Position numbers and translations under genes: made by a program. The notes beneath the pieces are model-generated. The model had not been told where the DNA came from and made no database searches. It saw nothing but the letters and a program-made list of their open reading frames with translations. From IMG/VR virus record IMGVR_UViG_3300043786_000977, positions 144,909-208,908 of that record: 64,000 nt of DNA; one strand, 5' to 3'. Below are positions 9,828 through 62,814 of this stretch, in pieces; the stretch's first letter is position 1, and every line of letters starts with the position of its first letter.

Positions 9828-9902
9828 GGCGGTTATTGTTTAGTGGTAGAACGACAGATTGTGGATCTGTCCGCACGAGTTCGATTCTCGTTAACCGCCC
9901 CA
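9828..9902 (+). tRNA. trnH: tRNA-His(GTG)
   Basis: 8-bp acceptor with encoded G-1 (GGCGGTTA/TAACCGCC), ACAGA-TTGTGGA-TCTGT, CCA. Confidence 0.93.
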
Positions 9903-9935
9903 CCTGCCTTTCCCTCTTTAATACTTCGTGATACT

Positions 9936-10904
9936 ATGTACGTACAAATAACAACCAAATGCAATTTCGCCTGCGACCATTGTATGTTCTCGTGCCGACC
10001 CGGCAAGGGTCAACACATGACCATGGATACCGTGCGGGCAACTGCGCGGTTCATTAGGTGGCAGGGTAACGAACACTTCTTTATCGGCGGCGGTGAACCA
10101 ACCCTCCATCCCAAGTTCTGGGATGTCGTCGATATCGTTAAGGACTGCAACGCTGACTGGGCAGAAGAGAATGGCTGCCCGCCTGTTCAGTTGGTTACGA
10201 ACGGCAGCAAGACCAAGACAGTGATGCGTCTGGTAGAGATGGCTGATAAAGACGAAGCCTCCGTGCGTTTGAGTCGTGATCAGTTTCATCTCAAGTACCC
10301 GATCGACCCGAGCGTCATCGCAGCTTTTCCGAAGCATTCGCACTTGTCTATCGGTTCGTACATCCATAACGTAGTGAACACGGGCCGAGCCCAGCGTTCC
10401 GTTTGGGCTGCAAATCCACGACCCGGTTGTGACGCCTGTGGACCTGTCGTTACACCTAACGGAAAGATCTGGCGTTGCACTTGCCGTCAGGAATGCATCG
10501 GTGATGTGTTCCGTGGTTACGACTGCGACTCAGAGTTGATCGACTACGACAGCGCAATCGGTTGTACTATCAGGGACGGTAAACTGGTCCGTGACCCCCG
10601 TAGCAATCTCTTAAGGCACAGGCACGAAATGGAAGCAGAAGGTTGGATCTTCAATCCAAACGTGTTTGAAGGCCAACTCGAATTTGATCTTAACAGCGAA
10701 CTATTCAAGGATACGCACCATGGGACGAATAACAGCACTAGGACTGCAGGATCCAATCCTGAAGTTAACGTTGACGGAACAAATACGGATGCATCTGCAG
10801 GGGAACCATTACCCGCCGGTGTCCAAGGTGTTCGTGCCGCTTTGCGTGAAGGCAATACGATTTGCGAACCGGGGAGCGGGGGAACACAAGTTGCGATTGC
10901 CTGA
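9936..10904 (+). CDS. Radical SAM protein
   Basis: CNFACDHC (CxxxCxxC), GGGEPTLHP, VTNG, C-terminal SPASM/twitch-like Cys; start at MYVQ. Confidence 0.88.
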   Translation: MYVQITTKCNFACDHCMFSCRPGKGQHMTMDTVRATARFIRWQGNEHFFIGGGEPTLHPKFWDVVDIVKDCNADWAEENGCPPVQLVTNGSKTKTVMRLVEMADKDEASVRLSRDQFHLKYPIDPSVIAAFPKHSHLSIGSYIHNVVNTGRAQRSVWAANPRPGCDACGPVVTPNGKIWRCTCRQECIGDVFRGYDCDSELIDYDSAIGCTIRDGKLVRDPRSNLLRHRHEMEAEGWIFNPNVFEGQLEFDLNSELFKDTHHGTNNSTRTAGSNPEVNVDGTNTDASAGEPLPAGVQGVRAALREGNTICEPGSGGTQVAIA

Positions 10905-15441: not shown

Positions 15442-16935
15442 ATGCGTAAGACAACGTCAATGATCAGAGGTCACAATTCAGATCCCTTGCACGCGCACAG
15501 CGGGGATCATCACCTGGAGTTCTTCTCGAAGGCGGGTTCGCTCTTCGTGAAGGGCAAGGGTAAGAAAGGCGCCAGCTACTACGGTACCAGTTCCGAGACG
15601 ACAGCCCTGTCACTCTTCCAGCCCATGTGGATGTCGCCAGGCCTGGAGAACAAGACACTGGCCATGCAGTTGCTGTTCTGGTTACGTGATCCCCGCGGTG
15701 GCGCCGGCAATCGGTCGGGTTTCCGGGAAATCGTGCGCTGGTTGGCGCAGCAGCCTGAGACGTCGGTTGATCCGTCGGGTGCCACTTGGCTGGGTGTCAA
15801 CCTGTTGCGGGTTCCGGAATGGGGACGCTGGGACGATCTGGCAGAACTGTACGGTACGTCACTCGAGCCGCTTGTCGCGGGCGTCTGGACAGAAGCGATC
15901 ATGCGGAAGGAGCACCTGGCTTGTAAGTGGGCCAAGGTTGATATGGTACCGCTGCAGCGCGCCCTGAAAATCAATGAGCGTGGGTTGCGGATGTTGATCG
16001 TACCGCCCCGTGCCACGATCGTTGAGCGTGCTATGTGCGCGGGTGACTGGACTGCCGTGGACTACTCGAAGATTCCGAGTAAGGCGATGTCCATGTACAC
16101 GAAGGCGTTCCGGATGCACGACAAGCCCCGGTTCGACGAGTACAAGGCGGCACTGGTGCGTGGGGATAAAGGCGTGAAGATTAACGCTAGTGTGTTGTTC
16201 CCGCACGACTGTGTGAAGCAGGCGAAGACTGGTGATCAGATCATCGCTGAAGCGCAGTTTAAAGCGTTGCCCGATTTCATCGGTGGCACGGATCGGCGTA
16301 TCATCGTGTTGGCTGACCGGTCTGGTTCGATGGGTGCTATAGCGCAGGATACGATTACGAACGATAATGTGGCTGTGGCCTTGGCGCTGTATTGCAGCGA
16401 TCGGCTGGGTCCGCAGAATCCGTTCTATCGGCAGTATCTGGAATTCCAGAGTACACCGTTCTGGGTGGATTGGAAAAACGAGACGTTTGTGCAAGCCTGT
16501 CGGTCCGGTCAAGGATTCGCGGGTAGCACGAACTTACAAGGGGCGCTTGACGCTATATTGAAGCAGGGCAAAGCTTGGAGAGTCCCTCCGGCACAGATGC
16601 CTACGATGCTTCTGATCGTCAGCGATATGCAGTTCGATAACCACGTTACTGGGGGAACCCGGATGATAGCCTGTCACGGAACTGAACAGACTGTGGTTGA
16701 GAAATGTATGCAACAGTGGGAAGCTGCTGGTTATCAGCGGCCGACTATTGTTTTCTGGAATCTTGCAGGCTACGCAGGGCAACCTGCGCAAGCACAGACA
16801 CCGAACACTGCCCTTGTGTCCGGTTTCTCACCTGCCATACTGAAATCCATACTGTCTGGTAAAGAAGTTTTACCCCGAGAGGTCATGCTCCGGGCAATAG
16901 CTAAATATCAGGTAGAGGTCCCCTGCGTGGGGTAA
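15442..16935 (+). CDS. Ro60/TROVE-related RNA-binding protein (DUF2828-type, C-terminal vWA)
   Basis: LFWLRDPRGGAG, RWDDL, ACKW, DYSKIPSKAM, INASVLFPHD, vWA LADRSGSM, STNLQ, IVSDMQFD, IVFWNL, LVSGFSP. Confidence 0.85.
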   Translation: MRKTTSMIRGHNSDPLHAHSGDHHLEFFSKAGSLFVKGKGKKGASYYGTSSETTALSLFQPMWMSPGLENKTLAMQLLFWLRDPRGGAGNRSGFREIVRWLAQQPETSVDPSGATWLGVNLLRVPEWGRWDDLAELYGTSLEPLVAGVWTEAIMRKEHLACKWAKVDMVPLQRALKINERGLRMLIVPPRATIVERAMCAGDWTAVDYSKIPSKAMSMYTKAFRMHDKPRFDEYKAALVRGDKGVKINASVLFPHDCVKQAKTGDQIIAEAQFKALPDFIGGTDRRIIVLADRSGSMGAIAQDTITNDNVAVALALYCSDRLGPQNPFYRQYLEFQSTPFWVDWKNETFVQACRSGQGFAGSTNLQGALDAILKQGKAWRVPPAQMPTMLLIVSDMQFDNHVTGGTRMIACHGTEQTVVEKCMQQWEAAGYQRPTIVFWNLAGYAGQPAQAQTPNTALVSGFSPAILKSILSGKEVLPREVMLRAIAKYQVEVPCVG

Positions 16936-49730: not shown

Positions 49731-50099
49731 ATGTTAGCAGGTATGCAGGGAACAGGGCTGTCTATGTTTAGTTCGATGGCTGCACCTAATCTCGGGCCTT
49801 CGCCCGAGGAGATGGATGCCGAACGGCAACGGATACTGTTTAAGAAAAACGTTCAGTTGAAGGCGCATCATGTACGTATTTTCGATCTGCATGATCCTGC
49901 TGACGTGAAGGCATACGAGAAGCAGATGAAGATTCTGATCGCCGGGGTGCAGGCAAAGAGTCATGTGATCTGGGATAATGATCGGCAGTTGGTGACACGC
50001 AAGGGTGAACAAGGATGGCAGCGATACATGGAGTGGAGTGAGTTTGTCTTGAATGAGGAAGCCACAGCCCCAGTCGGTGTCGCAATTGAAGGGAAATGA
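49731..50099 (+). CDS. Hypothetical protein
   Basis: ORF in a tight operon. Confidence 0.65.
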   Translation: MLAGMQGTGLSMFSSMAAPNLGPSPEEMDAERQRILFKKNVQLKAHHVRIFDLHDPADVKAYEKQMKILIAGVQAKSHVIWDNDRQLVTRKGEQGWQRYMEWSEFVLNEEATAPVGVAIEGK

Positions 50100-50100
50100 T

Positions 50101-51573
50101 ATGCAAAAACAAGGGATGGGTACTGTAACACGGCATGCGATCGGCGGGGCTGCGATCGGTGGCGGTGCAGCTGCACTCGTAAATCTGGTTCATATGATTA
50201 ACCAGATGCGTGAGGCACGAGCCAAGGCATTGAAACCTACAGAGACAGACGAGAACACAATCGTACTGACACTGCCCAATAAGCGTGCCGAGATTAACGA
50301 TAAGCATACCAAGGTCACGTCTGTTGAGGGACCCGAGTCTGCGGACTTCGTGCTTAATCGTAAAAATGGACAGAGTCGGCGTATGGGCAGCATGCAATTC
50401 GGTCCACGCCTATGCTCTACGGACAAACAGGCAGGCATGAACCCCGGTTGGCAAACACTCACAGCGTCGGCCTTGGCCGGGTTAGGTGGCGGTGTCGGTG
50501 GTTATATGCTGGTCAACAAGTTATATGAGCTGCAACGGGCACGACGTCTGCAACAGGATCTGGACGCGGCCAAGAAGGAATATATGGATCTGCTCTCGGG
50601 TAACGCGGTCAAGGGCGCCTCCTGTATCGAGAACGCGTTCGGTTGGCAGGTACCCGGTGACGAGAAGCAAGCTGGTTCCACTTTTGGTCTAGTAAACTAT
50701 CCATTGGCTGCAATGGCCCTTTTATCGGTCCTTGGTGCTGGTGCGACCGGTTATATCACGAAGCGTATCCTAGATGAAAAGTTCAGGGCCGTACAGGATA
50801 AGTCACTGGATATACCGAAAGTGAAGCGTATTGTTTTCCGTAGCGCACCTGCCACTGACCAGGATCCGGAGAAGGTTGCTTCGGTCGAGGACAGTGAAGC
50901 GATCATGGGTGGCCTCATGGTCATGATGGACCGTGTTTCCGGAACAGATCGTTTTACCGGTTCGCCAGAATTGCAACCTGTCCTTGAGAAGATCGGTATG
51001 ACCAAGGAAGCTCTGGTGAAGGAGGCTGGTGATTGGGACACGCTTTATAATCATTTAGAGCAGGCGCCTGATCTACGCAAGGCACTCTACGGTTTGTATA
51101 CGCGGTACACATCTAATCCCGTTACCGGTTTTTTTAAGCGGCTTGCGTTGAACGTCCCCGCGGTTCAACGCAAGGCTGATCAACGTCTGTACTCTATGTT
51201 GGACACGATGCGTAACCAGATGCCGCGGGGCGGTATGAAGTGGCAACCGGCGGTACCGCAGACCGGCATGCAGCCTAAAGTCGCACAGGATGCGACAATT
51301 ACCCCGTCACCTCTTGTAGCTCTGGCGTCAGGTTTGTTCGGTCGTACTGTAGGTCAAGGCCTGACTGACAATGAACGGACACCCGAGGAAATGGCGCAGT
51401 TAATCGTAGCTGCCCAGGAACAGGCGGCAAACCGGCGTCGTATGCAGGGTACCAAGGTCCGTGATGACGTAAAGGTAGACGGCGCAGATCCTAAGGCTAA
51501 GACGTATGTGATCAAGAACAGGGCGGCAATTCAAGCCCTGGTAAAACGACTGGCCGCTGAAGGACAGGTATAA
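50101..51573 (+). CDS. Multi glycine-zipper putative virion-internal protein
   Basis: Repeated KQAG/KVAS/KEAG segments preceding hydrophobic Gly-rich helices. Confidence 0.7.
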   Translation: MQKQGMGTVTRHAIGGAAIGGGAAALVNLVHMINQMREARAKALKPTETDENTIVLTLPNKRAEINDKHTKVTSVEGPESADFVLNRKNGQSRRMGSMQFGPRLCSTDKQAGMNPGWQTLTASALAGLGGGVGGYMLVNKLYELQRARRLQQDLDAAKKEYMDLLSGNAVKGASCIENAFGWQVPGDEKQAGSTFGLVNYPLAAMALLSVLGAGATGYITKRILDEKFRAVQDKSLDIPKVKRIVFRSAPATDQDPEKVASVEDSEAIMGGLMVMMDRVSGTDRFTGSPELQPVLEKIGMTKEALVKEAGDWDTLYNHLEQAPDLRKALYGLYTRYTSNPVTGFFKRLALNVPAVQRKADQRLYSMLDTMRNQMPRGGMKWQPAVPQTGMQPKVAQDATITPSPLVALASGLFGRTVGQGLTDNERTPEEMAQLIVAAQEQAANRRRMQGTKVRDDVKVDGADPKAKTYVIKNRAAIQALVKRLAAEGQV

Positions 51574-52047
51574 ATGCGTGATCGTACAATACAGTATAGC
51601 CGTGTAACGGAGATCGTAACCAAGTGGGCGCAACAGGCAGAAGAACAACCTCTGCATGCTGACGAGAAGTTGCGGCGTAAGGAGCGTGTACGGCGCATAC
51701 TCGGTACCATGTTGGGCGCGGGTTACGGTACACTGGCAGGTGGTTTCGTCGGGGGTCAGGTGTTGGGCCGCGGTCCCGGGTTCGACCGGCAACGGGCTGT
51801 TAAAGGCATGCTGCTTGGCCTGATCGGTGGTGGTAGTCTTGGTTATGCAGGCGGCGCCGCTGTGAATAAGATTCAGCGCTATACAGGGGATCATAGACCA
51901 CAGCCTCAATCACAGACCATTCAGATCATCGTGCCGCCGGATAGCAATATCGTACAACGGGCGGCAGATGCAATGGATGATGGACAGGGGTCCAAGACAG
52001 CGGCAGTGTTAAGAAAACGTTTTAGGAGGTTCCTAAGTAGCGTATGA
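51574..52047 (+). CDS. Glycine-zipper protein
   Basis: GTMLGAGYGTLAGGFVGG. Confidence 0.65.
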   Translation: MRDRTIQYSRVTEIVTKWAQQAEEQPLHADEKLRRKERVRRILGTMLGAGYGTLAGGFVGGQVLGRGPGFDRQRAVKGMLLGLIGGGSLGYAGGAAVNKIQRYTGDHRPQPQSQTIQIIVPPDSNIVQRAADAMDDGQGSKTAAVLRKRFRRFLSSV

Positions 52048-52092
52048 ATAATGACAGCGATGCTTCACCACAAGAATTGACGCAGGTGCCTG

Positions 52093-52386
52093 ATGATGAC
52101 CAACCTCCTCTTGTTAACAATCGTATTCGGGGTAGCCTGGATCGATTGGTTCATTTATGGCAAGAAGGGCGACGCTCTGATAGATCGATCCCCTTGGCTC
52201 ATATTTTGGGCATGCGGGGAGGCTTCATTGGGCGTAGTAGCGGGCTTTGTGGTATGGGACGCTTACCAGTCACGGGAATGGTTTAGGATAGTCGGCGTAC
52301 TCGGAGCGACAGTTGTCGGCTGCGCGTTAGGTATAATCACCAGTAGGGTAATCGATTGGAAGAAATGGAGGATGCGACATGGATAA
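52093..52386 (+). CDS. Small multi-TM membrane protein (holin-like candidate)
   Basis: Three hydrophobic segments, basic C-terminus KKWRMR. Confidence 0.5.
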   Translation: MMTNLLLLTIVFGVAWIDWFIYGKKGDALIDRSPWLIFWACGEASLGVVAGFVVWDAYQSREWFRIVGVLGATVVGCALGIITSRVIDWKKWRMRHG

Positions 52387-53308
52387 ACAAGCATACATAC
52401 GGGGCGTGTTAACAAAGTACGCCGAGCAGAAGCAAGCAGCAGGGTGGGGAGCCGTAGGCAGGGGTATTGGTCGGGTGGTCGGCGGATGGGGCGATGATGC
52501 GGTACGTGCCGCCACAAAGCCAGGTATCGGGTCACGGATCGGTCAAGCCGTTGCAGCCAAGGCACCAATGGCTGGAAGTGCACTAGACCGCATCCTTGCA
52601 CAGTCTAAGGGCCTAACCAGTCGCCTTATAAACGATCCTGGTTTGCGGAGTTTCTTGGCCCGTCACGGTACTCAGGCAAGCACGGGTGCACAGGCTATGG
52701 GGTCAGAGTTTATGCGGGGCATGGGACGGGCGGTACGTCCGTTCAGTAATAGTGCTGCGGACCAATTGTTTGCCCGTCAGATTATCAGTCCTGAGGTCCT
52801 AAAGTACATCGCAAGTCATGTGCCTCAAGCAACAGGGGCACGTAGTTTGCGCAGTGCATTCAGTCTTCCGAATATTGGTTTTCAGGCAGGACGGTATTCA
52901 CCACTTGCTGCCGCGTTAAGTATAGGCAATCAAATCGGCGCCAGCGGCAACCCTGACAAGTACGCCGCGGCTCCCGATAACGATCGAGCATTGACGGGTA
53001 ATATCCTGGGTGGTCTGGGTGGTTTATCTGTAGGTAGTAATGCCGGGCAGTTACTGGAGTCGGGCGTGGGGGCACAGGCCGCGGGTGGTAACTTCCTAGG
53101 CGGAGTCAGGCATGCGGTACGAAATCCAGTGCAAGCACGTAAGCTAAATACGGCCGAGTTAGTGCGGGCCATACTCATGAAGGACAAGCACACTTTAAGA
53201 AAGTTGATGGGCGCTAAGTTAGGTGGTTTGGCCTTGGCGGGTGCAGGTATCTACGGTGGTATCCGTGGCGGCGGTGCATTACAACGGAAATTGCGTCAAC
53301 CGAAATAG
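52379..53308 (+). CDS. Gly/Ala-rich protein with shared N-terminal module
   Basis: MDKQAYIRGVLTKYAEQKQAAG. Confidence 0.7.
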   Translation: MDKQAYIRGVLTKYAEQKQAAGWGAVGRGIGRVVGGWGDDAVRAATKPGIGSRIGQAVAAKAPMAGSALDRILAQSKGLTSRLINDPGLRSFLARHGTQASTGAQAMGSEFMRGMGRAVRPFSNSAADQLFARQIISPEVLKYIASHVPQATGARSLRSAFSLPNIGFQAGRYSPLAAALSIGNQIGASGNPDKYAAAPDNDRALTGNILGGLGGLSVGSNAGQLLESGVGAQAAGGNFLGGVRHAVRNPVQARKLNTAELVRAILMKDKHTLRKLMGAKLGGLALAGAGIYGGIRGGGALQRKLRQPK

Positions 53309-53310
53309 AC

Positions 53311-54192
53311 ATGAATCCCTTACTTCTACGTTATCTAAAGTTGCTCAGTGGTTCAGGTATACGTACCTCGAAGGCCACGGGTGCGCCTATTGGTAAAGAG
53401 GTAGCGAAGACAGTTGGTACACAGTTGGGTACGGCTGGTGCTATTGCAGGTCTAGGTTACGGTGGGAAGAAAGTGGTAGAACATTATCCCGAACTCAAGG
53501 ATATGTTGGACAACGTATTTCACAAGAGTCGCATCGGCCGCGTGATGGACGGACTCGGTATAAAGACGAGTCAATATCAATATCAAGATCCGGACACACA
53601 ATTACGGACGTCGTTGTTGAGTTTGCTCGCCGGTGGTGTACCTGCTGGATTAGGTCAGTTTGCGCACGAGACGTTACCGGACTTGAAGCCACGTGAGCGT
53701 ATTGCCAAGCGTATACTTGCGCTATCACAGAAGCACCACAAAGGTGTTATAGAGGGCAGTCAGTACGCCTTCGATTCAAATACACGTAAGATTCACTCAC
53801 CAGATGGTCTCAAAGGTAATGTCGGAGCTATTGCTCATGAGGCAGGACATGCGATGGATCCGGTACTCAAGCGTACTGGACGTCTTCACAATATATTGCG
53901 CGGTGCTGGAGGTTTCGCAGGTAGTTGGGGTGCGATGGCAGCTTCTGATCGTGATACAGCACGGAACTACGCACTTGGCGGCAGTGCGCTTGCCTTACCC
54001 ACTTTAGCGCACGAGACCTATGCAGGAATCAAAGGTATGCAGTTGTTACGTCAGACATCACGGAAGATACCAACCAAGGTTTTGCTACGTGCCATGAGCG
54101 GACTACCATCTTATGCAGGTGCAGCCCTAGCACCTTTGGCAGTTTACGGCACCCGGTCAGCATTGGGAGGCTTCGGAGATAAAAATGATTAG
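53311..54192 (+). CDS. Putative Zn-metallopeptidase (HExxH) with glycine zippers
   Basis: AIAHEAGHA plus downstream LAHE. Confidence 0.6.
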   Translation: MNPLLLRYLKLLSGSGIRTSKATGAPIGKEVAKTVGTQLGTAGAIAGLGYGGKKVVEHYPELKDMLDNVFHKSRIGRVMDGLGIKTSQYQYQDPDTQLRTSLLSLLAGGVPAGLGQFAHETLPDLKPRERIAKRILALSQKHHKGVIEGSQYAFDSNTRKIHSPDGLKGNVGAIAHEAGHAMDPVLKRTGRLHNILRGAGGFAGSWGAMAASDRDTARNYALGGSALALPTLAHETYAGIKGMQLLRQTSRKIPTKVLLRAMSGLPSYAGAALAPLAVYGTRSALGGFGDKND

Positions 54193-57100
54193 TACACCAC
54201 CGGCATCGCCATTACCATCACACTTGCGGGATTTCGACGATACCGACAAGGCACGGGAACTGATTTATTCCGGTGCCCTGGATGCGGTATCGAAACGTTT
54301 TCCTGTCGAAGATGACGAGTATCGCGTTGAGTTACACAAACCACGATATACCGGGGTTCAGACCTATTCGCTGGAGCAACAGAAGCAGGCGCTGATGAAG
54401 GAGCGTCGTCTGACTACACCGATCACGGGTACCTGGAAACTGGTGCACAAGCCCACGGGTGCTGTGCTGGATGAGCGTGAGGATGTCGTGATGAATGTGC
54501 CCTATTACACGCAGCGGGGTACTTTCATTCACGGCGGTAACGAGTACAGTGTTGTGAACCAGGCACGCTTGCGTCCTGGCGTGTACATTCGGCGCCAACG
54601 TACGGGTGAGATAGAAGGCCACGTCAACGTCAAGTCGGGTTCGGGTAAACCATTCCGCGTGCAGCTGGAACCCAACACTGGTGTGTTCAAGTTACACGTG
54701 GGGCAGTCCAACGTACCGCTTTATCCGTTAATGCGTGCCGTAGGTGTCACGGATCAGCAACTGATCAAGGCGTGGGGTGCTGACCTTGTGGCAGCCAATA
54801 TCAAGAAGCAGGATCCGCGGTCAATCGCGAAGTTGTATGATCGCTTCGCCGGTTATAAAGCTGAACCTGGTATAGATGAAGCGGGTCAGACAAAGTATCT
54901 TCGAGATTCATTACCGTTATTTGAGTTGGACGAGGATGTCAACGCACGTACGCTCGGTCTTACAGGAGCTAAGGGTGTAACGCCTGATGTACTCCTGCGT
55001 ATGACTTCGAAGATGTTGGGTGTATCGCGTGGCGAAGAGGATCCGGATGATCGTGACTCTCCACAGTTCAGTCATATCTACGGCGTGGAAGATCTCATAC
55101 GTGAACGTATTGATAAGGATGCGGGTAAGCTGACACAGAGTATGCTGCGCAAGGTACGGCGTTCGCGTAATCTCCAGGCTGTGCGCCGTGGTGCCTTGAA
55201 CTCTTATCTCGATAGCCTGTTGTTAGGCTCAGGGCTGGCAATGCCTTTGGAGGAAACGAACCCGTTGCATACACTTGAGCAGCTGAATCGTATCACCAAA
55301 CTCGGTGAAGGCGGTATTGGATCGGCTGAGGCCATTACAGATGAGGCCCGTGACGTTAACTCAGGGCAGTTCGGTTTTGTGGATCCGATCACTGGACCAG
55401 AGGGTTGCCAAGCTTCTTCAATGCAAGTACTTACGTATGATGGTTGGGTATCGTGGCCGAACGTAACTATGGATATGCGTTTGGCATGCAACATTGACGG
55501 TCAATTGGAATACCATAAGCCTACTGAATTACATGCGTTTGATCACGATGGTTGGATCTATGAGGCCCGTACTAAGCACCTAGCGTTCAGTGTAACAGGT
55601 GATCATAAGATTTGGAATCGTGCGTACGATCCGGGATCCGCGTATCGCTGGGAGCGTGTAGGTGCGTCATTTGAGCGTGATCGGCATATCTGTATAGGCG
55701 GACATTCGCCCGTGTCTGGTTGCGATACTGACTTCGAACTTCCGATTGTCGAGGGTGGTCATGCGCTTAAACTTACGACGACAACCATCCCTATGTTACT
55801 GTGGGCCGAATTCATGGGGTGGTTTCTAAGCGAGGGTAGCACCTGTGTTAGATCCGACGGACAGATTCAGGTCAGTATCGCGCAACACGATCCGGAGAAC
55901 CAGGAGCGGATACGTCGTGTTTTGACACAACTTCCATTTGAGTTTTCGGAGAATCGAGTTCATGGTGAGTTGCACGCTTTTATAATTGTGCGTAAACAGC
56001 TTGGAGTGTATCTGCAACAGTTCGGTCGTTCTGCAGACAAGTATATTCCACAGTATTTGCTTGATGCCAGTATTGAAGCCCGTAAGGTGTTGTTGTCGTC
56101 TTTGTGCGCGGGCGACGGGCGGCGTAAAGGTTCTACGTACACATATTGCACGACAAGTCATCGACTTGCACTTGATGTTGAGCGTCTTGCGTTTTCGTTG
56201 GGTTACTCCGTACGTGTACGTTTCGAGAAGGACGATCGACCCCAGGCATTACAGGGCGGCACGTGGTGCGTGCATTTGCATCTCACCAAGGAACGCTGTG
56301 TCCTAAAACGTCATATGTCTCGTCGTCCTTACACTGGAAAGGTTTACTGCGCCACGGTACCCGGTAGTCAACTGTATGTACGTTTGGGTGACTACGGTGG
56401 GCACTGGTCCGGGAACATGAACATCGGTATTGACGTGCGTGCAGCCTATCGTACGTTCAAGGGTAACGATAACAACATGTACGCCGAGTTCAACGACATA
56501 GGTACGGGGAAGCCCGTTTATCTGCGCCCTGACGAAGCCGCGTCACGTGTCGTGGCATTTCCCGGGCAAGACCCCAAGGCGGCTACGATATACGCTATGC
56601 GTCGTGGGAAGGTTGAACGTGTACCGCGGGCGGAAGTTGACCTCGCTGTACCTTCGTTCGCACACATGATGTCCAGTCATACCAATCTCAATCCGATGCC
56701 GACAGCTGTACAAGCCGGTCGTCAGTTCTACGGTGCCAAGTTCTGGAGCCAGTACATGCCACAAGTGGCAGGTGAGGTACCTCTTGTTGACTCGCTCATG
56801 CCTGATGGCAAGACGACGTGGACTGAGCACTACGGGCGCAAGGTGGGTACGTTAAAGAGTGACGTGGGTGGTACGGTCGTTAAGGTGACTGATAAGGGTG
56901 TGACCGTCATGGATGCCGATGGTAAAAAGCATCTGAACGAGTTGGTGAAGGACTTCCCGTTTAATCGGTTGACAGGTATCAGTTACTTCCCGACTGTAAA
57001 AGTAGGTGACCAAGTCAATGTTGGTGATATGGTTGCCCACTCTAATTTCACGGACTCTAAAACAGGGGCGTTGAATCTTGGCCGCAATTTGCGTACAGCC

Positions 57101-59584
57101 ATCATCCCGTACAGGGGACACTCGTATGAGGATGCTTACGTGATCTCCAAGACCGCGGCTGATAAGCTGGCTTCGGAGCGTTTACAGGGCTTCGATCTGG
57201 ATGCACGCCACGGTGTCGAGATGGGACGTAACAAGTACATCTCTGCATTCCCGCGTGCGTATACGACGGAGCAGATAGATAATCTGGATGATGATGGCGT
57301 GGTTAAACCCGGTACTGTGTTGAAAAAGGGTGACCCGATCGCTTTAGCCGTAGGCCCGCGTCTACTTACAAGCGCCGACGCCCAGTTAGGTAAACTGCAT
57401 AAGGTATTACGAAGTGCCTATACCGATAAGTCATTGACATGGGATTACTCAGGCCCGGGCACAGTTACGGATGTCGCACTGACACGGAACGGTGTTCGTG
57501 TGAATATAAAGAGCACACCGCCTGTAAGCCAAGGTGATAAACTGTCGACACGCTTCGGACTGAAAGGTGTTGTTGGTACCATTTTGGATGACGATAAGAT
57601 GCCCAGGGATCCAGTAACCAATCAGCCCTATGAACTGTTACTGAATCCGATGGCCGTACTCTCACGCGTGGCGCCGAACCAGATCATGGAAATGGCGCTC
57701 GGTAAGATCGCAGCTAAGACAGGCAAGCAGGTTCGTATACCCCAGGAGCCACCACCAGAGGGTTGGATGAACTGGGTACAGGCGCAACTCGACGAAGCAG
57801 GTATAAAGGATTCTGCGGATATCTTTGATCCGGAGAGCGGTAAGACGATCCGTAACATCGGTGACGGTAGCGTATACGTGTCCGCCTTCCATCACTTGGC
57901 CGAGAAGAAGTTATCGAGCCGCGGTGACATCGGCAGTTATTCAGCTGACGAACAGCCAGCCCGCGGTGGTAGTACCGGGGCAAAGAAGTTTTCACAGATG
58001 GACGTTAACGCGGCCCTGGCTCACGGGGCGACAGATGTCATCAAGGACGTGATCACCATTCGTGGTACCAAGAACGAGGAGTTCTGGAAGGCCCTTAAAC
58101 TTGGCCGGCCGCTACCTGAACCCAAGGTGCCGTTCATATACGACAAGTTCCTGAATACCTTACGTGCCGGTGGGATCAACGTTGTAGAGAAAGGCGACAT
58201 GACACAGTTGTTGCCTATGATGGACGACGACGTTAAACAGTTGTCGAAGGGTGTTGTGACCAGTAGTGATATGGTTGATTCTGATTTTGAACCGATGGCT
58301 GGTGGTCTCTTCGATGTCGGACGTACAGGTGGTATGGCAGGTAACCGGTGGACACATATCGAGTTGCCTGAACCACTCCCTAACCCCGTAATGGAAGAAC
58401 CGATCCGTCGTTTGCTCGGGCTCAAGATACAGGATATGGAAGATATCGTGGCTGGGCGTAAGGAGTTGAATGGTCAAACGGGTGGCGGTGCGTTAAAGGC
58501 TGCACTTGAGAAGATAGACCTGGATGCCATGATCACAGAGCACAGGCAGAAGGTACGGGTACTGCGTGGTGCTAATCGCGATAACTCGGTAAAGGTGTTG
58601 GGCTATCTTGCCTCTGCCAAGGAGCAAGGTATTCATCCCGCGAAATGGATCATCAGCAAGGTACCTGTATTGCCACCTGTCTTCCGTCCTATTTCGCGTA
58701 TGGGTGACGTAGCCTTGTCTGCAGACTTGAATGAGCTATACCGTGACGTGTTGGAGAGTTCTAAGACATTCAAGGAACTCAAACCAGATCTGCCAGATTC
58801 CGAGTTGGCAGATGAACGCTTGAACATATACAACTCTGTGCGTGCGGCATACGGCTTCGGCGATTCGATTACACCTGAGGGTCGATCGAAGCATCTTAAG
58901 GGCGCCGTACGTCAAGTCATCGGTACGTCTCCGAAGTTCGGGTTGTTCCAGTCCAAGGTTATATCAAAGCCGGTTGATGTTGTGGGACGTGGTGTGGTTA
59001 TACCCAACCCCAACCTGGATATGGATCAGCTCGGTATTCCTGCCGATTCGGCGTGGACATTGTACAAGGACTTCGTGATGCGCGCCCTCGTTCGCCACGG
59101 GTACCCGGCGATACGTGCAGCCGAAATGCTTGAGAACCGAACACCGGAAGCCAAGGAGATGCTGGAGAAGGAAATGTCAACACGGCCGGTGATTATGGAT
59201 CGGGCACCGACGTGGCATAAATTCAACCTGTTGGCGTTCTACCCGCATATCGTTGAGGGTCATACGCTCCAGGTCAGCCCATTGGTGACCAAGGGTTTCA
59301 ATATGGACTTCGACGGAGACCAGGCCAACTTCCATGTACCGGTCTCAGATAAAGCCGTCAGCCAAGCGACACGTAAGATGCTACCGTCAGCAAATCTATT
59401 CAGCTTAACGGATCTACAGTCGGTCCGGCATGCACCGTCAATGGAGATGACATACGGACTGTACCAACTTACACGGGAACAAACGAAGAAACCGACACGT
59501 GTATTTAAGACAGCAAAGGAAGCAAGGGCAGCATATAAAGCGGGAGAAATCGCCGCGAACGATCCAATTGAAATACTTGCCTGA
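54185..59584 (+). CDS. Phage multisubunit RNA polymerase: beta fused to the N-terminal half of beta', intein-containing
   Basis: Beta motifs QRGTFI..NQARLRPGVY, PEG..NIG, YEDAYVIS, GDKLSTRFGLKG, LNP..VLSR, HH..KKLSSR; beta' motifs HIELP, VPVLPPVFRP, DLNELY, KPVD..GRGV, RAPT, catalytic NMDFDGD. Confidence 0.93.
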   Translation: MISTPPASPLPSHLRDFDDTDKARELIYSGALDAVSKRFPVEDDEYRVELHKPRYTGVQTYSLEQQKQALMKERRLTTPITGTWKLVHKPTGAVLDEREDVVMNVPYYTQRGTFIHGGNEYSVVNQARLRPGVYIRRQRTGEIEGHVNVKSGSGKPFRVQLEPNTGVFKLHVGQSNVPLYPLMRAVGVTDQQLIKAWGADLVAANIKKQDPRSIAKLYDRFAGYKAEPGIDEAGQTKYLRDSLPLFELDEDVNARTLGLTGAKGVTPDVLLRMTSKMLGVSRGEEDPDDRDSPQFSHIYGVEDLIRERIDKDAGKLTQSMLRKVRRSRNLQAVRRGALNSYLDSLLLGSGLAMPLEETNPLHTLEQLNRITKLGEGGIGSAEAITDEARDVNSGQFGFVDPITGPEGCQASSMQVLTYDGWVSWPNVTMDMRLACNIDGQLEYHKPTELHAFDHDGWIYEARTKHLAFSVTGDHKIWNRAYDPGSAYRWERVGASFERDRHICIGGHSPVSGCDTDFELPIVEGGHALKLTTTTIPMLLWAEFMGWFLSEGSTCVRSDGQIQVSIAQHDPENQERIRRVLTQLPFEFSENRVHGELHAFIIVRKQLGVYLQQFGRSADKYIPQYLLDASIEARKVLLSSLCAGDGRRKGSTYTYCTTSHRLALDVERLAFSLGYSVRVRFEKDDRPQALQGGTWCVHLHLTKERCVLKRHMSRRPYTGKVYCATVPGSQLYVRLGDYGGHWSGNMNIGIDVRAAYRTFKGNDNNMYAEFNDIGTGKPVYLRPDEAASRVVAFPGQDPKAATIYAMRRGKVERVPRAEVDLAVPSFAHMMSSHTNLNPMPTAVQAGRQFYGAKFWSQYMPQVAGEVPLVDSLMPDGKTTWTEHYGRKVGTLKSDVGGTVVKVTDKGVTVMDADGKKHLNELVKDFPFNRLTGISYFPTVKVGDQVNVGDMVAHSNFTDSKTGALNLGRNLRTAIIPYRGHSYEDAYVISKTAADKLASERLQGFDLDARHGVEMGRNKYISAFPRAYTTEQIDNLDDDGVVKPGTVLKKGDPIALAVGPRLLTSADAQLGKLHKVLRSAYTDKSLTWDYSGPGTVTDVALTRNGVRVNIKSTPPVSQGDKLSTRFGLKGVVGTILDDDKMPRDPVTNQPYELLLNPMAVLSRVAPNQIMEMALGKIAAKTGKQVRIPQEPPPEGWMNWVQAQLDEAGIKDSADIFDPESGKTIRNIGDGSVYVSAFHHLAEKKLSSRGDIGSYSADEQPARGGSTGAKKFSQMDVNAALAHGATDVIKDVITIRGTKNEEFWKALKLGRPLPEPKVPFIYDKFLNTLRAGGINVVEKGDMTQLLPMMDDDVKQLSKGVVTSSDMVDSDFEPMAGGLFDVGRTGGMAGNRWTHIELPEPLPNPVMEEPIRRLLGLKIQDMEDIVAGRKELNGQTGGGALKAALEKIDLDAMITEHRQKVRVLRGANRDNSVKVLGYLASAKEQGIHPAKWIISKVPVLPPVFRPISRMGDVALSADLNELYRDVLESSKTFKELKPDLPDSELADERLNIYNSVRAAYGFGDSITPEGRSKHLKGAVRQVIGTSPKFGLFQSKVISKPVDVVGRGVVIPNPNLDMDQLGIPADSAWTLYKDFVMRALVRHGYPAIRAAEMLENRTPEAKEMLEKEMSTRPVIMDRAPTWHKFNLLAFYPHIVEGHTLQVSPLVTKGFNMDFDGDQANFHVPVSDKAVSQATRKMLPSANLFSLTDLQSVRHAPSMEMTYGLYQLTREQTKKPTRVFKTAKEARAAYKAGEIAANDPIEILA
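55406..56416 (+). mobile_element. Intein (337 aa) with LAGLIDADG homing endonuclease in RNAP beta
   Basis: Starts CQASSMQVLTYDGW; blocks FMGWFLSEGS and LCAGDG; ends VYCATVP...WSGN; interrupts PEG|xNIG. Confidence 0.9.
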
Positions 59585-60966: not shown

Positions 60967-62814
60967 ATGCGAACCACTGTCGGTCAACTGCTTGTCAACG
61001 ACGCACTCCCGGAAGAATTCCGGGATTACACACGTGTATTGACTAAGGGCGACACCGATAAGTTATTGGCCGCTGTTGCAAAGACGCGGCCAGATGATTA
61101 TCGTGATATTTCACACAAGCTGGTACAGCTTGGGCGTAACGCAGCGTTCGAAGAAGGTACTACCTTGCGTTTGGGCGATCTACGAGCCCCTGTTGATAAG
61201 GCGGAGTTGTTAGATCATATCACGCAACAGGAAGACCGGATTACCGCAGATAAGACCATGACGCCGGCCGATAAGCAGGAAGCACGGGAGACCGTGTACT
61301 CTGAAGTCAATGATGCTTTGAAGAAGATGACCATGGACGCGTCTCTGGCTTCCGAGAATCCGTTTGCCTTACAGGTGAAGTCCAAGGCACGTGGTAATCC
61401 CGATCAGTTGGCAGCCATGCTTACGACGCCTGGTGTATACCAGGACGCCAAGGACAATATCATACCCGTGTTCATACGTCACAGCTACGCCGAGGGTCTA
61501 CAACCCCACGAGTACTGGGCAGCCACGTACGGGGCGCGTAAGGGCGTTATATCCTCGAAATTCGCCACTCGTCAAGCCGGGGCTCTTGGGAAGTTATACG
61601 GTATGGCCGTAATGGATTCTGTCGTCACCCAGGACGATTGTGAATCCCCGTATGGTATACCGGTAAAAGCGGACGATAATGACAATCTAGGTTCGGTTTT
61701 ATCGCGTCCCGTCGCCGGATTTACCGCGGGGACGGTAATAGATAAGCATGTTATGGCTGCGTTGCAGAGTAAGAAGATCGATCAGATCGTTGTGCGTTCG
61801 CCTATTACTTGTACGTTATCCAAGGGTGTATGCAAACACTGTGTGGGTCTACGGGAAGGCGGCGAGTTCCCGCCCATTGGGTACCACATCGGATTGAATG
61901 CCGCGTCTGCGATGGCAGAACAGATTGCCCAGGCATCGCTCAACGTAAAGCACTCCGGAAAGAAAGCTAAGGGTCAGACGACCTACTCTGGTTTTAACGT
62001 CATCAAGAATCTATCCACGGTACCGCAGACATTTCCGGATCGTGCGACAGTCGCCGAACGCGACGGTAAAATCACTAAGGTTGCTGAGGCGCCACAGGGT
62101 GGTTATCACGTCTACATCGACGACGAGGAACACTACGTCCCGGCCGGTATGGACCTGCACATCAAGGAAGGGGATACGGTTGAGGCCGGTGATCAGTTGT
62201 CGGACGGTATCGTCAATCCTTCAGACGTTGTACGTTTGAAGGGTTTGGGGGAAGGCCGGCGATACTTTGCAGAACGGTTGACACAGGCATTCCGTGAAAC
62301 CAATTTCGGGGTGAACCGCCGTAATGCTGAGGTCCTGGCACGTTCGATCGTGAATCACATACAGGTCGACGACGACGGTGCCGCGGGCGAACATCTACCG
62401 GGGGATGTTGTTACATACGGATCATGGGCCTACGGATATCGGCCGCGCAAGGATGCGAAGCGTTTAACGCCCAAGGCTGCGCTGGGGCAGTACTTGGAAG
62501 AACCCGCCATGCATTATACGGTCGGTACCCGTGTCACAAAAAATATGGCGAATATGTTACAACAACAAGGGACACAGGATATACTTACACACACGGCACC
62601 TGTGGGTGTTTCGCCTGTGATGATGTCTGTTGTTAAAACGCCCGAGTATACGGATGACTGGATGGCACGTTTGAGTTCAACCTACTTGAAGACACGGTTG
62701 CTGGAAGATGTACACGCCGGCGCCAAGTCAAACGTACACGGGATTCATCCGATCCCGGGTATTGCGAAGGGCACGGAGTTCGGACAGCAAAAGGGTAAGA
62801 CGTTCACGTACTAA
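60967..62814 (+). CDS. Phage RNA polymerase beta' C-terminal half
   Basis: TTVGQLL, SKARGN, SYAEGL..Y....YGARKG (bridge helix), DDC, VRSPITC..GVCKHCVG Zn site, IG..AA.A.AEQ..Q..L..KH (trigger loop). Confidence 0.92.
   Translation: MRTTVGQLLVNDALPEEFRDYTRVLTKGDTDKLLAAVAKTRPDDYRDISHKLVQLGRNAAFEEGTTLRLGDLRAPVDKAELLDHITQQEDRITADKTMTPADKQEARETVYSEVNDALKKMTMDASLASENPFALQVKSKARGNPDQLAAMLTTPGVYQDAKDNIIPVFIRHSYAEGLQPHEYWAATYGARKGVISSKFATRQAGALGKLYGMAVMDSVVTQDDCESPYGIPVKADDNDNLGSVLSRPVAGFTAGTVIDKHVMAALQSKKIDQIVVRSPITCTLSKGVCKHCVGLREGGEFPPIGYHIGLNAASAMAEQIAQASLNVKHSGKKAKGQTTYSGFNVIKNLSTVPQTFPDRATVAERDGKITKVAEAPQGGYHVYIDDEEHYVPAGMDLHIKEGDTVEAGDQLSDGIVNPSDVVRLKGLGEGRRYFAERLTQAFRETNFGVNRRNAEVLARSIVNHIQVDDDGAAGEHLPGDVVTYGSWAYGYRPRKDAKRLTPKAALGQYLEEPAMHYTVGTRVTKNMANMLQQQGTQDILTHTAPVGVSPVMMSVVKTPEYTDDWMARLSSTYLKTRLLEDVHAGAKSNVHGIHPIPGIAKGTEFGQQKGKTFTY

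What the first reader, a model, noticed from the sequence alone, without database searches (positions are those of the whole stretch)
55406..56419. Intein in the essential RNAP beta region whose +1 extein residue is Met, not Cys/Ser/Thr
Seen: ...GPEG|CQASS...HWSGN|MNIGID, with the +1 codon ATG at 56417. Known: canonical splicing needs a +1 nucleophile; without it only N- or C-terminal cleavage can occur. ATG is one transition from ACG (Thr). Inference: either (a) a sequencing error or lethal variant, (b) the intein acts as a self-cleaving linker producing a split beta near the PEGxNIG region, or (c) internal translation starts at this Met or the codon is recoded or edited.
Basis: partly seen in the sequence, partly recalled or inferred. 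Interest (0 to 1): 0.68.

Follow-up and report, generated by a model that had tools for sequence, protein, structure and literature searches.

The report
RNA polymerase intein lacking splice nucleophile
A jumbo phage's only RNA polymerase beta gene is interrupted by a genuine, well-conserved intein whose following residue is Met (Leu in its seven closest relatives), so the textbook protein-splicing chemistry cannot run and the element must be removed in an unusual way.

Summary
Window 55406-56416 encodes a 337-residue LAGLIDADG intein in the fork domain of a fused RNAP beta/beta'-N gene (54185-59584). This is the only beta gene of a complete 208.9-kb phage genome. Junctions are GPEG|C... and ...HWSGN|MNIGID, and the +1 codon is ATG. 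It is not a sequencing error. In an 85-member family of inteins at this loop, 77 of the 78 members outside this clade have +1 Ser and one has Thr. The window belongs to a well-supported clade of eight inteins from at least seven samples. The other seven have +1 Leu, encoded by CTC, CTG or CTT, so Met is one step from CTG. Cys1, block-B Thr/Ser and His, and the terminal Asn are kept in all eight. Both LAGLIDADG acidic residues are kept in seven; the eighth has lost the first motif by deletion. Synonymous sites are saturated while pN stays far below pS in both intein and exteins. The nearest intein-free alleles read GPEG|LNIGID. Canonical transesterification is therefore impossible. The intein is most likely removed by Cys1 thioester formation plus Asn cyclisation. 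The exteins are then either joined by direct aminolysis, as proposed for type A BIL domains, or left as a two-piece beta. Sequence cannot decide between these.

The parts
54185..59584 (+). Host gene: fused RNAP beta + N-terminal half of beta' (1799 aa including the intein). It contains NMDFDGD at 59300-59335 and is the only beta-like gene of the phage genome.
   Evidence: Pfam Rpb2_6 1.8e-38, Rpb1_2 1.6e-23, Rpb2_3, Rpb1_1. Single PF00562 match in the complete 208,908-bp genome.
54185..55405 (+). N-extein, residues 1-407, ending DPITGPEG; the -1 residue is Gly407.
   Evidence: The Pfam fork domain Rpb2_3 match (residues 355-410, profile 3-56 of 68) is cut by the insertion.
55406..56416 (+). 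Intein, 337 residues (408-744): HINT splicing domain with an inserted LAGLIDADG homing endonuclease.
   Evidence: Profile hits to solved inteins. AF2 pLDDT 94.3. Foldseek top hits are TliVMA, PhoVMA and PI-SceI inteins plus I-DmoI. 85-member family alignment A2.
55406..55444 (+). Block A; Cys1 codon TGC at 55406-55408.
   Evidence: Cys1 is invariant in 85/85 family members. TGC/TGT synonymous variation occurs within the Leu/Met clade.
55586..55615 (+). Block B (FSVTGDHKIW): Thr64 at 55595-55597, His67 at 55604-55606.
   Evidence: His is invariant and Thr nearly invariant in A2. Both are kept in all 8 clade members, as Thr or Ser plus His.
55799..55840 (+). LAGLIDADG motif 1 (…GWFLSEGS), with the catalytic Glu.
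   Evidence: Pfam LAGLIDADG_3 22.9 bits against a cut-off of 22.5. Glu and Gly are nearly invariant. Table; coordinates.
56087..56125 (+). LAGLIDADG motif 2 (…LCAGDGRR), with the catalytic Asp.
   Evidence: Aligned to the PI-PkoII and VMA intein endonuclease domains.
56336..56416 (+). Blocks F and G (GKVYCATVPGSQLYV / RLGDYGGHWSGN). Cys at F:4; ending His-Trp-Ser-Gly-Asn; terminal Asn744 codon AAC at 56414-56416; penultimate residue Gly, not His.
   Evidence: Trp(-4), Gly(-2) and Asn(-1) are invariant in 85/85. Table.
56417..56419 (+). +1 extein codon ATG (Met745), where canonical inteins need Cys, Ser or Thr.
   Evidence: Relatives in the same clade have CTC, CTG, CTG, CTT, CTT, CTC.
56417..59584 (+). 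C-extein, residues 745-1799 (MNIGIDVR…): the rest of beta plus beta'-N.
   Evidence: It aligns without a gap to intein-free alleles across the junction.
60967..62814 (+). Separate gene for the C-terminal part of beta' (615 aa), partner of the intein-bearing gene.
   Evidence: Pfam Rpb1_5 1.1e-11. The same arrangement occurs next to P0003.

Best explanation
This is a genuine, inherited homing-endonuclease intein of the RNA-polymerase 'Gly-Asn' family, inserted in the fork-domain PEG-x-NIG loop of the phage's only RNAP beta. It belongs to a sub-clade that has lost the +1 Ser/Thr nucleophile and now has Leu, or Met in this window. It has nevertheless kept every residue needed for the two junction reactions. 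Proposed mechanism follows. Cys408 makes the Gly407~Cys408 thioester by an N-S acyl shift. Asn744 cyclises and frees the C-extein with a free alpha-amine on Met745. That amine, held next to the thioester by the HINT fold and by the folding beta subunit, attacks the unhindered Gly407 thioester. This joins the exteins directly and gives GPEG-MNIGID, exactly as in intein-free alleles. This is the route proposed for type A bacterial intein-like domains. What is shown: the intein is real; the non-nucleophilic +1 is a clade trait and not an error; and the catalytic residues, the endonuclease and the host gene are all under purifying selection. What is inferred: both junctions are still processed. 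What is speculative: the exteins are ligated rather than merely cleaved. The confidence of 0.4 applies to the whole statement including ligation; for the shown parts alone (real intein, heritable non-nucleophilic +1) it is about 0.95.
For: In the 85-intein family at this loop, 77 of the 78 sequences outside the Leu/Met clade have +1 Ser and one has Thr.
The Leu/Met group of 8 sequences is one clade with UFBoot 99 and SH-aLRT 96, and the window is nested inside it.
The +1 codons are CTC, CTG, CTG, CTT, CTT, CTC and ATG.
Members come from at least 7 samples. P0003 occurs on contigs of two ENA samples.
Cys1, block-B Thr/Ser and His, and the terminal Asn are kept in 8/8. Both LAGLIDADG acids are kept in 7/8, and the eighth has a deletion.
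Within the clade pS is 0.6-0.98 (saturated) while pN is 0.05-0.47 in the intein and 0.12-0.30 in the exteins.
P0011 has lost part of its endonuclease but keeps the splicing blocks.
There is only one beta gene in a complete genome.
The closest intein-free alleles read GPEG|LNIGID, so precise removal of C408-N744 restores the native loop.
The -1 residue is Gly in all 8 clade members; Gly is the least hindered acyl donor (established chemistry).
Precedent: type A BILs splice without a +1 nucleophile by thioester formation, Asn cyclisation and attack of the free amine (review PMC4031507).
RNAP inteins sit on the cleft surface or on the interface between the two largest subunits, and probably have to be removed before the subunits assemble (PMC1635734).
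Against: There is no biochemical or proteomic evidence here.
In type A BILs cleavage products dominate over spliced product (PMC4031507; PMC7664689).
From my own knowledge, canonical inteins mutated at +1 generally give cleavage only.
No clade-specific change was found in the splicing blocks that would explain a new ligation chemistry. Clade-specific residues lie mostly in the endonuclease domain.
All clade members are metagenomic assemblies.
Reads for the window codon could not be checked.
Confidence: 0.4

Rival explanations
1. Cleavage only. The intein cuts itself out by hydrolysis or thiolysis of the Cys408 thioester and by Asn744 cyclisation, without ligation. The functional polymerase then carries beta as two non-covalently associated pieces: residues 1-407, and residues 745-1799 fused to beta'-N.
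For: It needs only the residues that are conserved (Cys1, block B, Asn). It is the dominant outcome for HINT domains without a +1 nucleophile (PMC7664689; PMC4031507). This polymerase lineage already tolerates unusual subunit breaks and fusions: beta fused to beta'-N, with beta'-C as a separate gene. The Vibrio phage D181 homologue is interrupted elsewhere.
Against: The break would lie in one of the most conserved loops of beta, the fork domain PEG-x-NIG. No relative was found whose beta gene is naturally split at this point. Uncatalysed thioester hydrolysis is slow (own knowledge).
Confidence: 0.35
2. The intein is no longer removed. It stays as a 337-residue insertion domain in a working polymerase, or the gene is dispensable, and it persists only as a selfish homing element.
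For: Both LAGLIDADG catalytic acids are conserved, so homing drive could maintain the element. Clade-specific substitutions concentrate in the endonuclease domain.
Against: Cys1, the block-B His and the terminal Asn would then be free to drift. Yet they are kept in 8/8 despite saturated synonymous divergence, with synonymous codon changes at both Cys1 and Asn. P0011 has lost part of the endonuclease but kept the splicing blocks. The site lies in the fork domain; RNAP intein sites are on the cleft surface or the interface between the two largest subunits, where an unremoved 38-kDa domain should block assembly (PMC1635734). The exteins are under purifying selection and this is the only beta gene.
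Confidence: 0.08
3. Assembly or sequencing error, or a dead variant, in this one contig. The true codon would be ACG, TCG or similar.
For: ATG is one transition from ACG. The reads could not be inspected. More distant relatives have Ser or Thr.
Against: The seven nearest relatives all have a non-nucleophilic Leu at the same position, so Met is a conservative one-step change from CTG and fits the clade. The ORF is intact over 1799 codons.
Confidence: 0.02
4. Internal translation start at Met745, or recoding or editing of the codon.
For: The codon is ATG in the window.
Against: The homologous codon is CTC, CTG or CTT in the relatives. There is no convincing Shine-Dalgarno sequence in the 30 nt upstream. 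No sign of another genetic code was seen: the host ORF and the neighbouring ORFs read open under table 11.
Confidence: 0.01

Closest known systems
RNA-polymerase second-largest-subunit inteins of eukaryotes and NCLDVs (Cre RPB2, Pno RPA2, Cst/Sas RPB2-b, Bde RPB2-c, Ddi RPC2; Goodwin et al. 2006, PMC1635734)
   Same: They are LAGLIDADG inteins in highly conserved, cleft-facing sites of the beta/Rpb2 subunit. Bde RPB2-c and Ddi RPC2 are in the fork domain. Several end in Gly-Asn or Thr-Gly-Asn instead of His-Asn, like the …W-S/T/C-G-N ending here.
   Different: The one whose +1 residue the text I read states (Cre RPB2) has Cys, and the paper treats a Cys/Ser/Thr +1 as the rule. Here the host is a bacteriophage beta/beta'-N fusion and +1 is Met or Leu. 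Homology of the insertion sites was not tested because the figure is not held.
Type A bacterial intein-like (BIL) domains (Amitai 2003; Dassa 2004; Aranko 2013; summarised in PMC4031507 and PMC7664689)
   Same: They are HINT domains with an N-terminal Cys, a C-terminal Asn and a non-nucleophilic residue after the domain. Autoprocessing is by thioester formation plus Asn cyclisation, with some ligation by the freed alpha-amine.
   Different: BILs lie in hypervariable regions of non-conserved bacterial proteins. By my own knowledge they lack homing endonucleases and are not mobile by homing. They end in His-Asn. This element sits in an essential, highly conserved site, carries an apparently intact endonuclease, and is phylogenetically nested among canonical +1 Ser inteins.
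Its own family: inteins at the PE^S / PEG^S loop of phage RNAP beta (85 aligned here, all metagenomic)
   Same: Same insertion loop, same blocks, and 33-59% identity to the window over intein plus short flanks. The architecture matches. The sister sequences are P0006 (Thr), P0008 and P0009 (Ser) and P0012 (Ser).
   Different: Of the 78 outside the clade, 77 have +1 Ser and one has Thr. The clade of eight has Leu or Met. I found no published description of this family.
Class 3 inteins (WCT motif, block F Cys nucleophile; Tori et al. 2010, PMC2807308)
   Same: Cys at block F position 4, a hydroxyl or thiol residue at G:5, and a phage setting.
   Different: Class 3 inteins lack the N-terminal nucleophile and still need a +1 nucleophile. 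Here Cys1 is invariant, and one clade member (P0122) has Thr at F:4.

Membership tests
Intein (HINT protein-splicing element, class 1) | In-frame insertion at a conserved site of a host protein, absent from close homologues | tested here: met
   P0111 (82%/78% extein identity) and P0076 read GPEG|LNIGIDVR without the 337 residues.
Intein (HINT protein-splicing element, class 1) | N-terminal Cys/Ser (block A) and block B Thr-x-x-His | tested here: met
   Cys408; Thr471 and His474 (intein positions 64 and 67). Cys and His are invariant in 85/85.
Intein (HINT protein-splicing element, class 1) | C-terminal Asn preceded by His (block G His-Asn) | tested here: inconclusive
   Asn744 is invariant, but the penultimate residue is Gly in the whole family. 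Gly-Asn endings are documented for accepted RNAP inteins (PMC1635734).
Intein (HINT protein-splicing element, class 1) | [quoted passage not shown] | tested here: not met
   Met745 (ATG 56417-56419). Leu in the 7 nearest relatives.
Intein (HINT protein-splicing element, class 1) | HINT fold | tested here: met
   AF2 pLDDT 94.3, pTM 0.92. Foldseek top hits are the TliVMA, PhoVMA, PI-SceI, PI-PkoII and PI-PfuI inteins, E 3.6e-18 to 2e-9. Profile-versus-PDB sequence hits. Pfam Intein_splicing did not hit this copy.
Intein (HINT protein-splicing element, class 1) | Excises itself and ligates the exteins | not testable with these tools
   This needs expression and mass spectrometry.
LAGLIDADG homing endonuclease (double-motif, intein-borne) | Two LAGLIDADG motifs, each with its catalytic acidic residue, in an I-DmoI/PI-SceI-like fold | tested here: met
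   Motifs at 55799-55840 (…SEG) and 56087-56125 (…GDG). Pfam LAGLIDADG_3 22.9 bits against a cut-off of 22.5. I-DmoI structures at E about 3e-6. Cleavage activity was not testable.
Type A BIL domain | Cys1, C-terminal Asn and a non-nucleophilic following residue | tested here: met
   Cys408, Asn744, Met745.
Type A BIL domain | Located in variable regions of non-conserved bacterial proteins; no homing endonuclease; own sequence family distinct from inteins | tested here: not met
   It lies in the fork domain of the essential RNAP beta, carries a LAGLIDADG domain, and is nested within canonical +1 Ser inteins in the tree.
Class 3 intein | No N-terminal nucleophile; obligate block F Cys with the WCT motif | tested here: not met
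   Cys1 is invariant. F:4 is Cys in most members but Thr in clade member P0122.
Multisubunit RNAP beta (Rpb2) / beta' (Rpb1) host protein | Rpb2 domains 3 and 6, Rpb1 domains 1 and 2 with NADFDGD | tested here: met
   Pfam hits above the cut-off for Rpb2_6, Rpb2_3 and Rpb1_2. NMDFDGD at 59300-59335.

The most novel reading that the evidence does not exclude
A clade of true, mobile, endonuclease-bearing inteins in an essential viral RNA polymerase splices efficiently without any side-chain nucleophile at +1. It would do so by direct aminolysis of a Gly thioester by the alpha-amine freed through Asn cyclisation. This would be a fourth natural mechanistic class of intein, evolved from canonical +1 Ser ancestors within one family.
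Probability: 0.35. Interest if true: 0.85.

Novelty: new variant of a known kind. Interest (0 to 1): 0.72.

Why it matters
A Cys, Ser or Thr at +1 is treated as a defining, indispensable feature of inteins. It is used as a filter when inteins are annotated, and it limits where engineered inteins can be placed.

Here a natural clade has lived without it for a long time, in the single essential RNAP beta gene of its phages, while keeping every other catalytic residue. One of two outcomes follows. The first is a natural intein that ligates 'scarlessly' at Gly|Leu or Gly|Met junctions. That would be of direct interest for traceless protein ligation and for understanding how BIL domains arose from inteins. 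The second is a polymerase that works with its beta chain broken in the fork-domain PEG-x-NIG loop, which by my knowledge lines the rifampicin pocket in bacterial beta. That would be of interest for RNAP structure and for the origin of split phage polymerases.

The family offers matched Ser, Thr, Leu and Met natural variants, so the question can be tested directly.

Tried and rejected
- Megablast of the gene against GenBank phages found no match.
- tblastn found only distant homologues (28% identity): Salmonella phage Arash and Vibrio phages D181, D148 and D69.
- An exact-pattern search for the window's own junction in IMG/VR found none, possibly because own records are left out.
- A degenerate junction pattern found one IMG/VR hit (L022, Leu) and none in JGI metagenome contigs.
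- The search for related loci in IMG/VR returned only +1 Ser or Thr relatives.
- MAFFT of three distant homologues mis-placed the insertion; the junctions were instead fixed from closer relatives.
- Alternative junction assignments were considered: the intein ending at Trp741 with Ser742 as +1, or shifted by one residue. They were rejected because they would leave extra residues compared with intein-free alleles and would lack a terminal Asn.
- A search for a clade-specific new nucleophile or catalytic change in the splicing blocks found only His58, Gly331 and the +2 Asn. The remaining changes are in the endonuclease domain.
- dN/dS ratios proper could mostly not be computed because dS is saturated, so pN versus pS is reported.
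- Dassa et al. 2004 is not held in the library. Its mechanism is cited through the review PMC4031507.
- Literature searches found no description of phage RNAP-beta inteins or of inteins with a non-nucleophilic +1 residue.
- The large representative-protein search was not used, because the claim does not rest on the absence of relatives.
Full report
**What is there**

The window is the last 64 kb of a 208,908-bp IMG/VR virus record with direct terminal repeats, rated 100% complete. Almost all large ORFs lie on the + strand. The contents are typical of a jumbo phage, for example a ribonucleotide reductase and a radical-SAM protein.

ORF 54185..59584 (1799 aa, P0001) carries Pfam Rpb2_3, Rpb2_6, Rpb1_1 and Rpb1_2 domains and the NMDFDGD catalytic loop. 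It is therefore RNAP beta fused to the N-terminal half of beta'. The rest of beta' is a separate gene at 60967..62814. It is the only Rpb2_6-bearing gene in the genome.

**The observation**

- The sequence reads GAG GGT | TGC at 55400-55408 and AAC | ATG at 56414-56419, that is …DPITGPEG | CQASS…GGHWSGN | MNIGIDVR….
- The intein is residues 408-744 (337 aa) and +1 is Met745.
- The Pfam fork-domain match (Rpb2_3, residues 355-410, profile 3-56 of 68) is cut by the insertion.
- The closest intein-free relatives, P0111 (82%/78% identical in the flanking exteins) and P0076, read GPEG|LNIGIDVR. Precise removal of Cys408-Asn744 therefore restores the native loop.

**Is it an intein?**

Yes, by several lines of evidence.

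- tblastn of the insert finds known phage inteins in terminase and helicase genes.
- A profile of 85 relatives (alignment A2) hits PI-PkoII (2.9e-12), the Tli/Pho VMA inteins (3e-10) and, weakly, PI-SceI.
- The AlphaFold2 model is confident (pLDDT 94.3, pTM 0.92).
- Its best Foldseek matches are endonuclease-bearing inteins (TliVMA 3.6e-18, PhoVMA, PI-SceI, PI-PkoII, PI-PfuI), followed by I-DmoI for the inner domain.
- The blocks are recognisable:
  - block A at 55406-55444, with Cys1;
  - block B at 55586-55615, with Thr64 and His67;
  - the two LAGLIDADG motifs at 55799-55840 and 56087-56125, with Glu and Asp in place;
  - blocks F and G at 56336-56416, with Cys at F:4 and the ending H-W-S-G-N.
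- The penultimate residue is Gly rather than His in the whole family. The same Gly-Asn ending is described for accepted eukaryotic and viral RNAP inteins (PMC1635734).

**The family**

A word-index search with residues 360-800 gave 255 hits. Most are metagenomic phage beta/beta' fusions with one to several inteins. For 84 of the listed proteins, besides the window's own, I could fix both junctions at this loop.

There are two registers.
- Site a: …TPE|C…W[S/C/T]GN|S-x-x-[IAV]-G-[IV]-D, where +1 is the Ser of the native PES.
- Site b: one residue later, …PEG|C…WSGN|x.

In alignment A2, Cys1, the block-B His, Trp(-4), Gly(-2) and Asn(-1) are invariant. Of the 78 sequences outside the Leu/Met group, 77 have +1 Ser and one has Thr.

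**The +1 anomaly is a clade trait, not an error**

- At site b, P0002, P0003, P0004, P0005, P0007 and P0011 have Leu at +1.
- A degenerate DNA pattern found an eighth member in IMG/VR (L022, P0122), also Leu.
- The +1 codons are CTC, CTG, CTG, CTT, CTT and CTC, against ATG in the window.
- These sequences come from at least seven samples. P0003 is found on contigs of two ENA assemblies.
- In a careful IQ-TREE analysis the eight form one clade (UFBoot 99, SH-aLRT 96). Leu lies on both sides of the basal split and the window is nested inside. Met is therefore derived from Leu by CTG to ATG, not from ACG (the 79-sequence quick tree agrees).
- The nearest outgroups have Ser (P0008, P0009, P0012) or Thr (P0006).

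**Selection**

- Within the clade, synonymous differences are saturated (pS 0.6-0.98).
- Non-synonymous differences are much lower: 0.12-0.47 in the N-terminal splicing part, 0.15-0.39 in the endonuclease part, 0.05-0.38 in the C-terminal splicing part and 0.12-0.30 in the exteins.
- All eight members keep Gly(-1), Cys1, block-B Thr/Ser and His, H-W-[S/T]-G-N and the second LAGLIDADG acid. Seven keep the first LAGLIDADG acid.
- P0011 has a deletion that removes the first motif but keeps all splicing blocks.
- The Cys1 and Asn codons themselves vary synonymously (TGC/TGT, AAC/AAT).
- The host gene is therefore functional, and the junction chemistry is still under selection long after the +1 nucleophile was lost.
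- Residues specific to the clade lie mostly in the endonuclease domain. This fits an enzyme tuned to a Leu-type target.

**Mechanism**

Canonical class 1, 2 and 3 splicing all need a +1 Cys, Ser or Thr for transesterification (PMC4031507, PMC7664689). With Leu or Met this step is impossible. Two steps remain possible: formation of the Gly407~Cys408 thioester, and cyclisation of Asn744. Two outcomes follow.

1. The alpha-amine of Met745, freed by Asn cyclisation, attacks the thioester and ligates the exteins. This is exactly the route proposed for type A BIL domains, where 'cleavage products dominate' (PMC4031507). A Gly at -1 is present in all eight clade members. Gly is the least hindered acyl donor, and the two extein ends belong to one tight loop of a folding subunit. 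Both points should favour this route; this is inference.
2. The thioester is hydrolysed and beta works as two chains.

I rank outcome 1 slightly ahead (0.40 against 0.35). The site is one of the most conserved loops of beta, and no relative was seen with a gene break there. Sequence alone cannot decide between the two.

Non-removal is unlikely, given the conserved Cys1 and Asn, the fork-domain location and P0011 (PMC1635734). A sequencing error, an internal start and recoding are rejected, as set out above.

**Comparison with the known, and novelty**

The element works like a type A BIL domain but is not one. It is a mobile-type intein nested among canonical +1 Ser inteins, in an essential conserved site, with an endonuclease.

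It resembles the published RNAP inteins of eukaryotes and NCLDVs in three ways: the Gly-Asn ending, the fork and hybrid-binding sites, and the LAGLIDADG domain. For those, a Cys/Ser/Thr +1 is treated as the rule.

I found no paper describing phage RNAP-beta inteins or natural inteins with a non-nucleophilic +1 residue.

I rate it a new variant of a known kind and of high interest. It fails a defining feature of inteins while everything else says the element is alive. The family also supplies natural Ser, Thr, Leu and Met alleles for a direct test.

**Limits**

- All clade members are metagenomic.
- There are no biochemical data.
- dS is saturated, so only pN against pS is given.
- Only the best 120 of the 255 hits were examined.

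Noticed in passing
window 54185-59584 and 60967-62814: Unusual polymerase architecture. Beta is fused to the N-terminal half of beta' (through NMDFDGD) in one ORF, and the C-terminal half of beta' is a separate gene about 1.4 kb downstream. The same layout is seen in Salmonella phage Arash gp206 (annotated only as 'beta') and in many metagenomic relatives.
   Followed up: partly
relatives P0007-P0121: The same intein family, ending W-[S/C/T]-G-N|S/T, occupies several other sites of these beta/beta' proteins. Examples are before S-x-R-x-G-x-KGV, before SFIDP (P0076) and before SLEETNP. Some proteins reach about 3000 aa with 3-4 inteins, so the gene is an intein hot spot. All those other copies have +1 Ser or Thr.
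   Followed up: partly
relatives, junctions listed; trees: Closely related inteins sit in two registers one codon apart: PE^S and PEG^x. The register appears to have switched several times; the quick tree needs 5 changes for the site-b label, and well-supported branches force at least 2. One case is P0006 (site b) as sister to P0009 (site a). How an intein slides by one codon is unexplained.
   Followed up: partly
L008 (P0011), intein residues about 130-215 of the alignment: One Leu-type intein has an 80-residue deletion that removes LAGLIDADG motif 1 but keeps all splicing blocks. It is a degenerating endonuclease inside a still-constrained splicing domain.
   Followed up: no
L022 7960-13380 (P0122): This Leu-type member has Thr instead of the otherwise nearly invariant Cys at block F position 4. 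That Cys is therefore not indispensable in the clade.
   Followed up: no
window intein residue 28 (Cys435, about 55487-55489): A second Cys, in the motif …LAC-x-[IV]-[DN]-G, is conserved in at least 90% of the 85 inteins. Its role is unknown; a redox partner of Cys1 is one untested possibility.
   Followed up: no
L002 (Vibrio phage D181) 6004-11518: The homologous polymerase gene is annotated as two 'hypothetical' CDSs separated by small ORFs and a homing endonuclease gene. It is probably an intron-type interruption at a different site from the intein.
   Followed up: no
L005 and L006 (both from run ERR13731085): Two distinct Leu-type alleles (P0004, P0005) co-occur in one sample. Their inteins differ by pN 0.05-0.15 and pS 0.64-0.68 across the three intein parts.
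   Followed up: no
window 4436-6355, 9843-10904, 15442-16935: A ribonucleotide reductase (phrog_367, 1.3e-176), a radical-SAM protein and a protein matching phrog_850 ('RNA-binding protein') lie upstream. Most neighbouring ORFs of the polymerase gene (50053-54192) have no Pfam or PHROG match.
   Followed up: no
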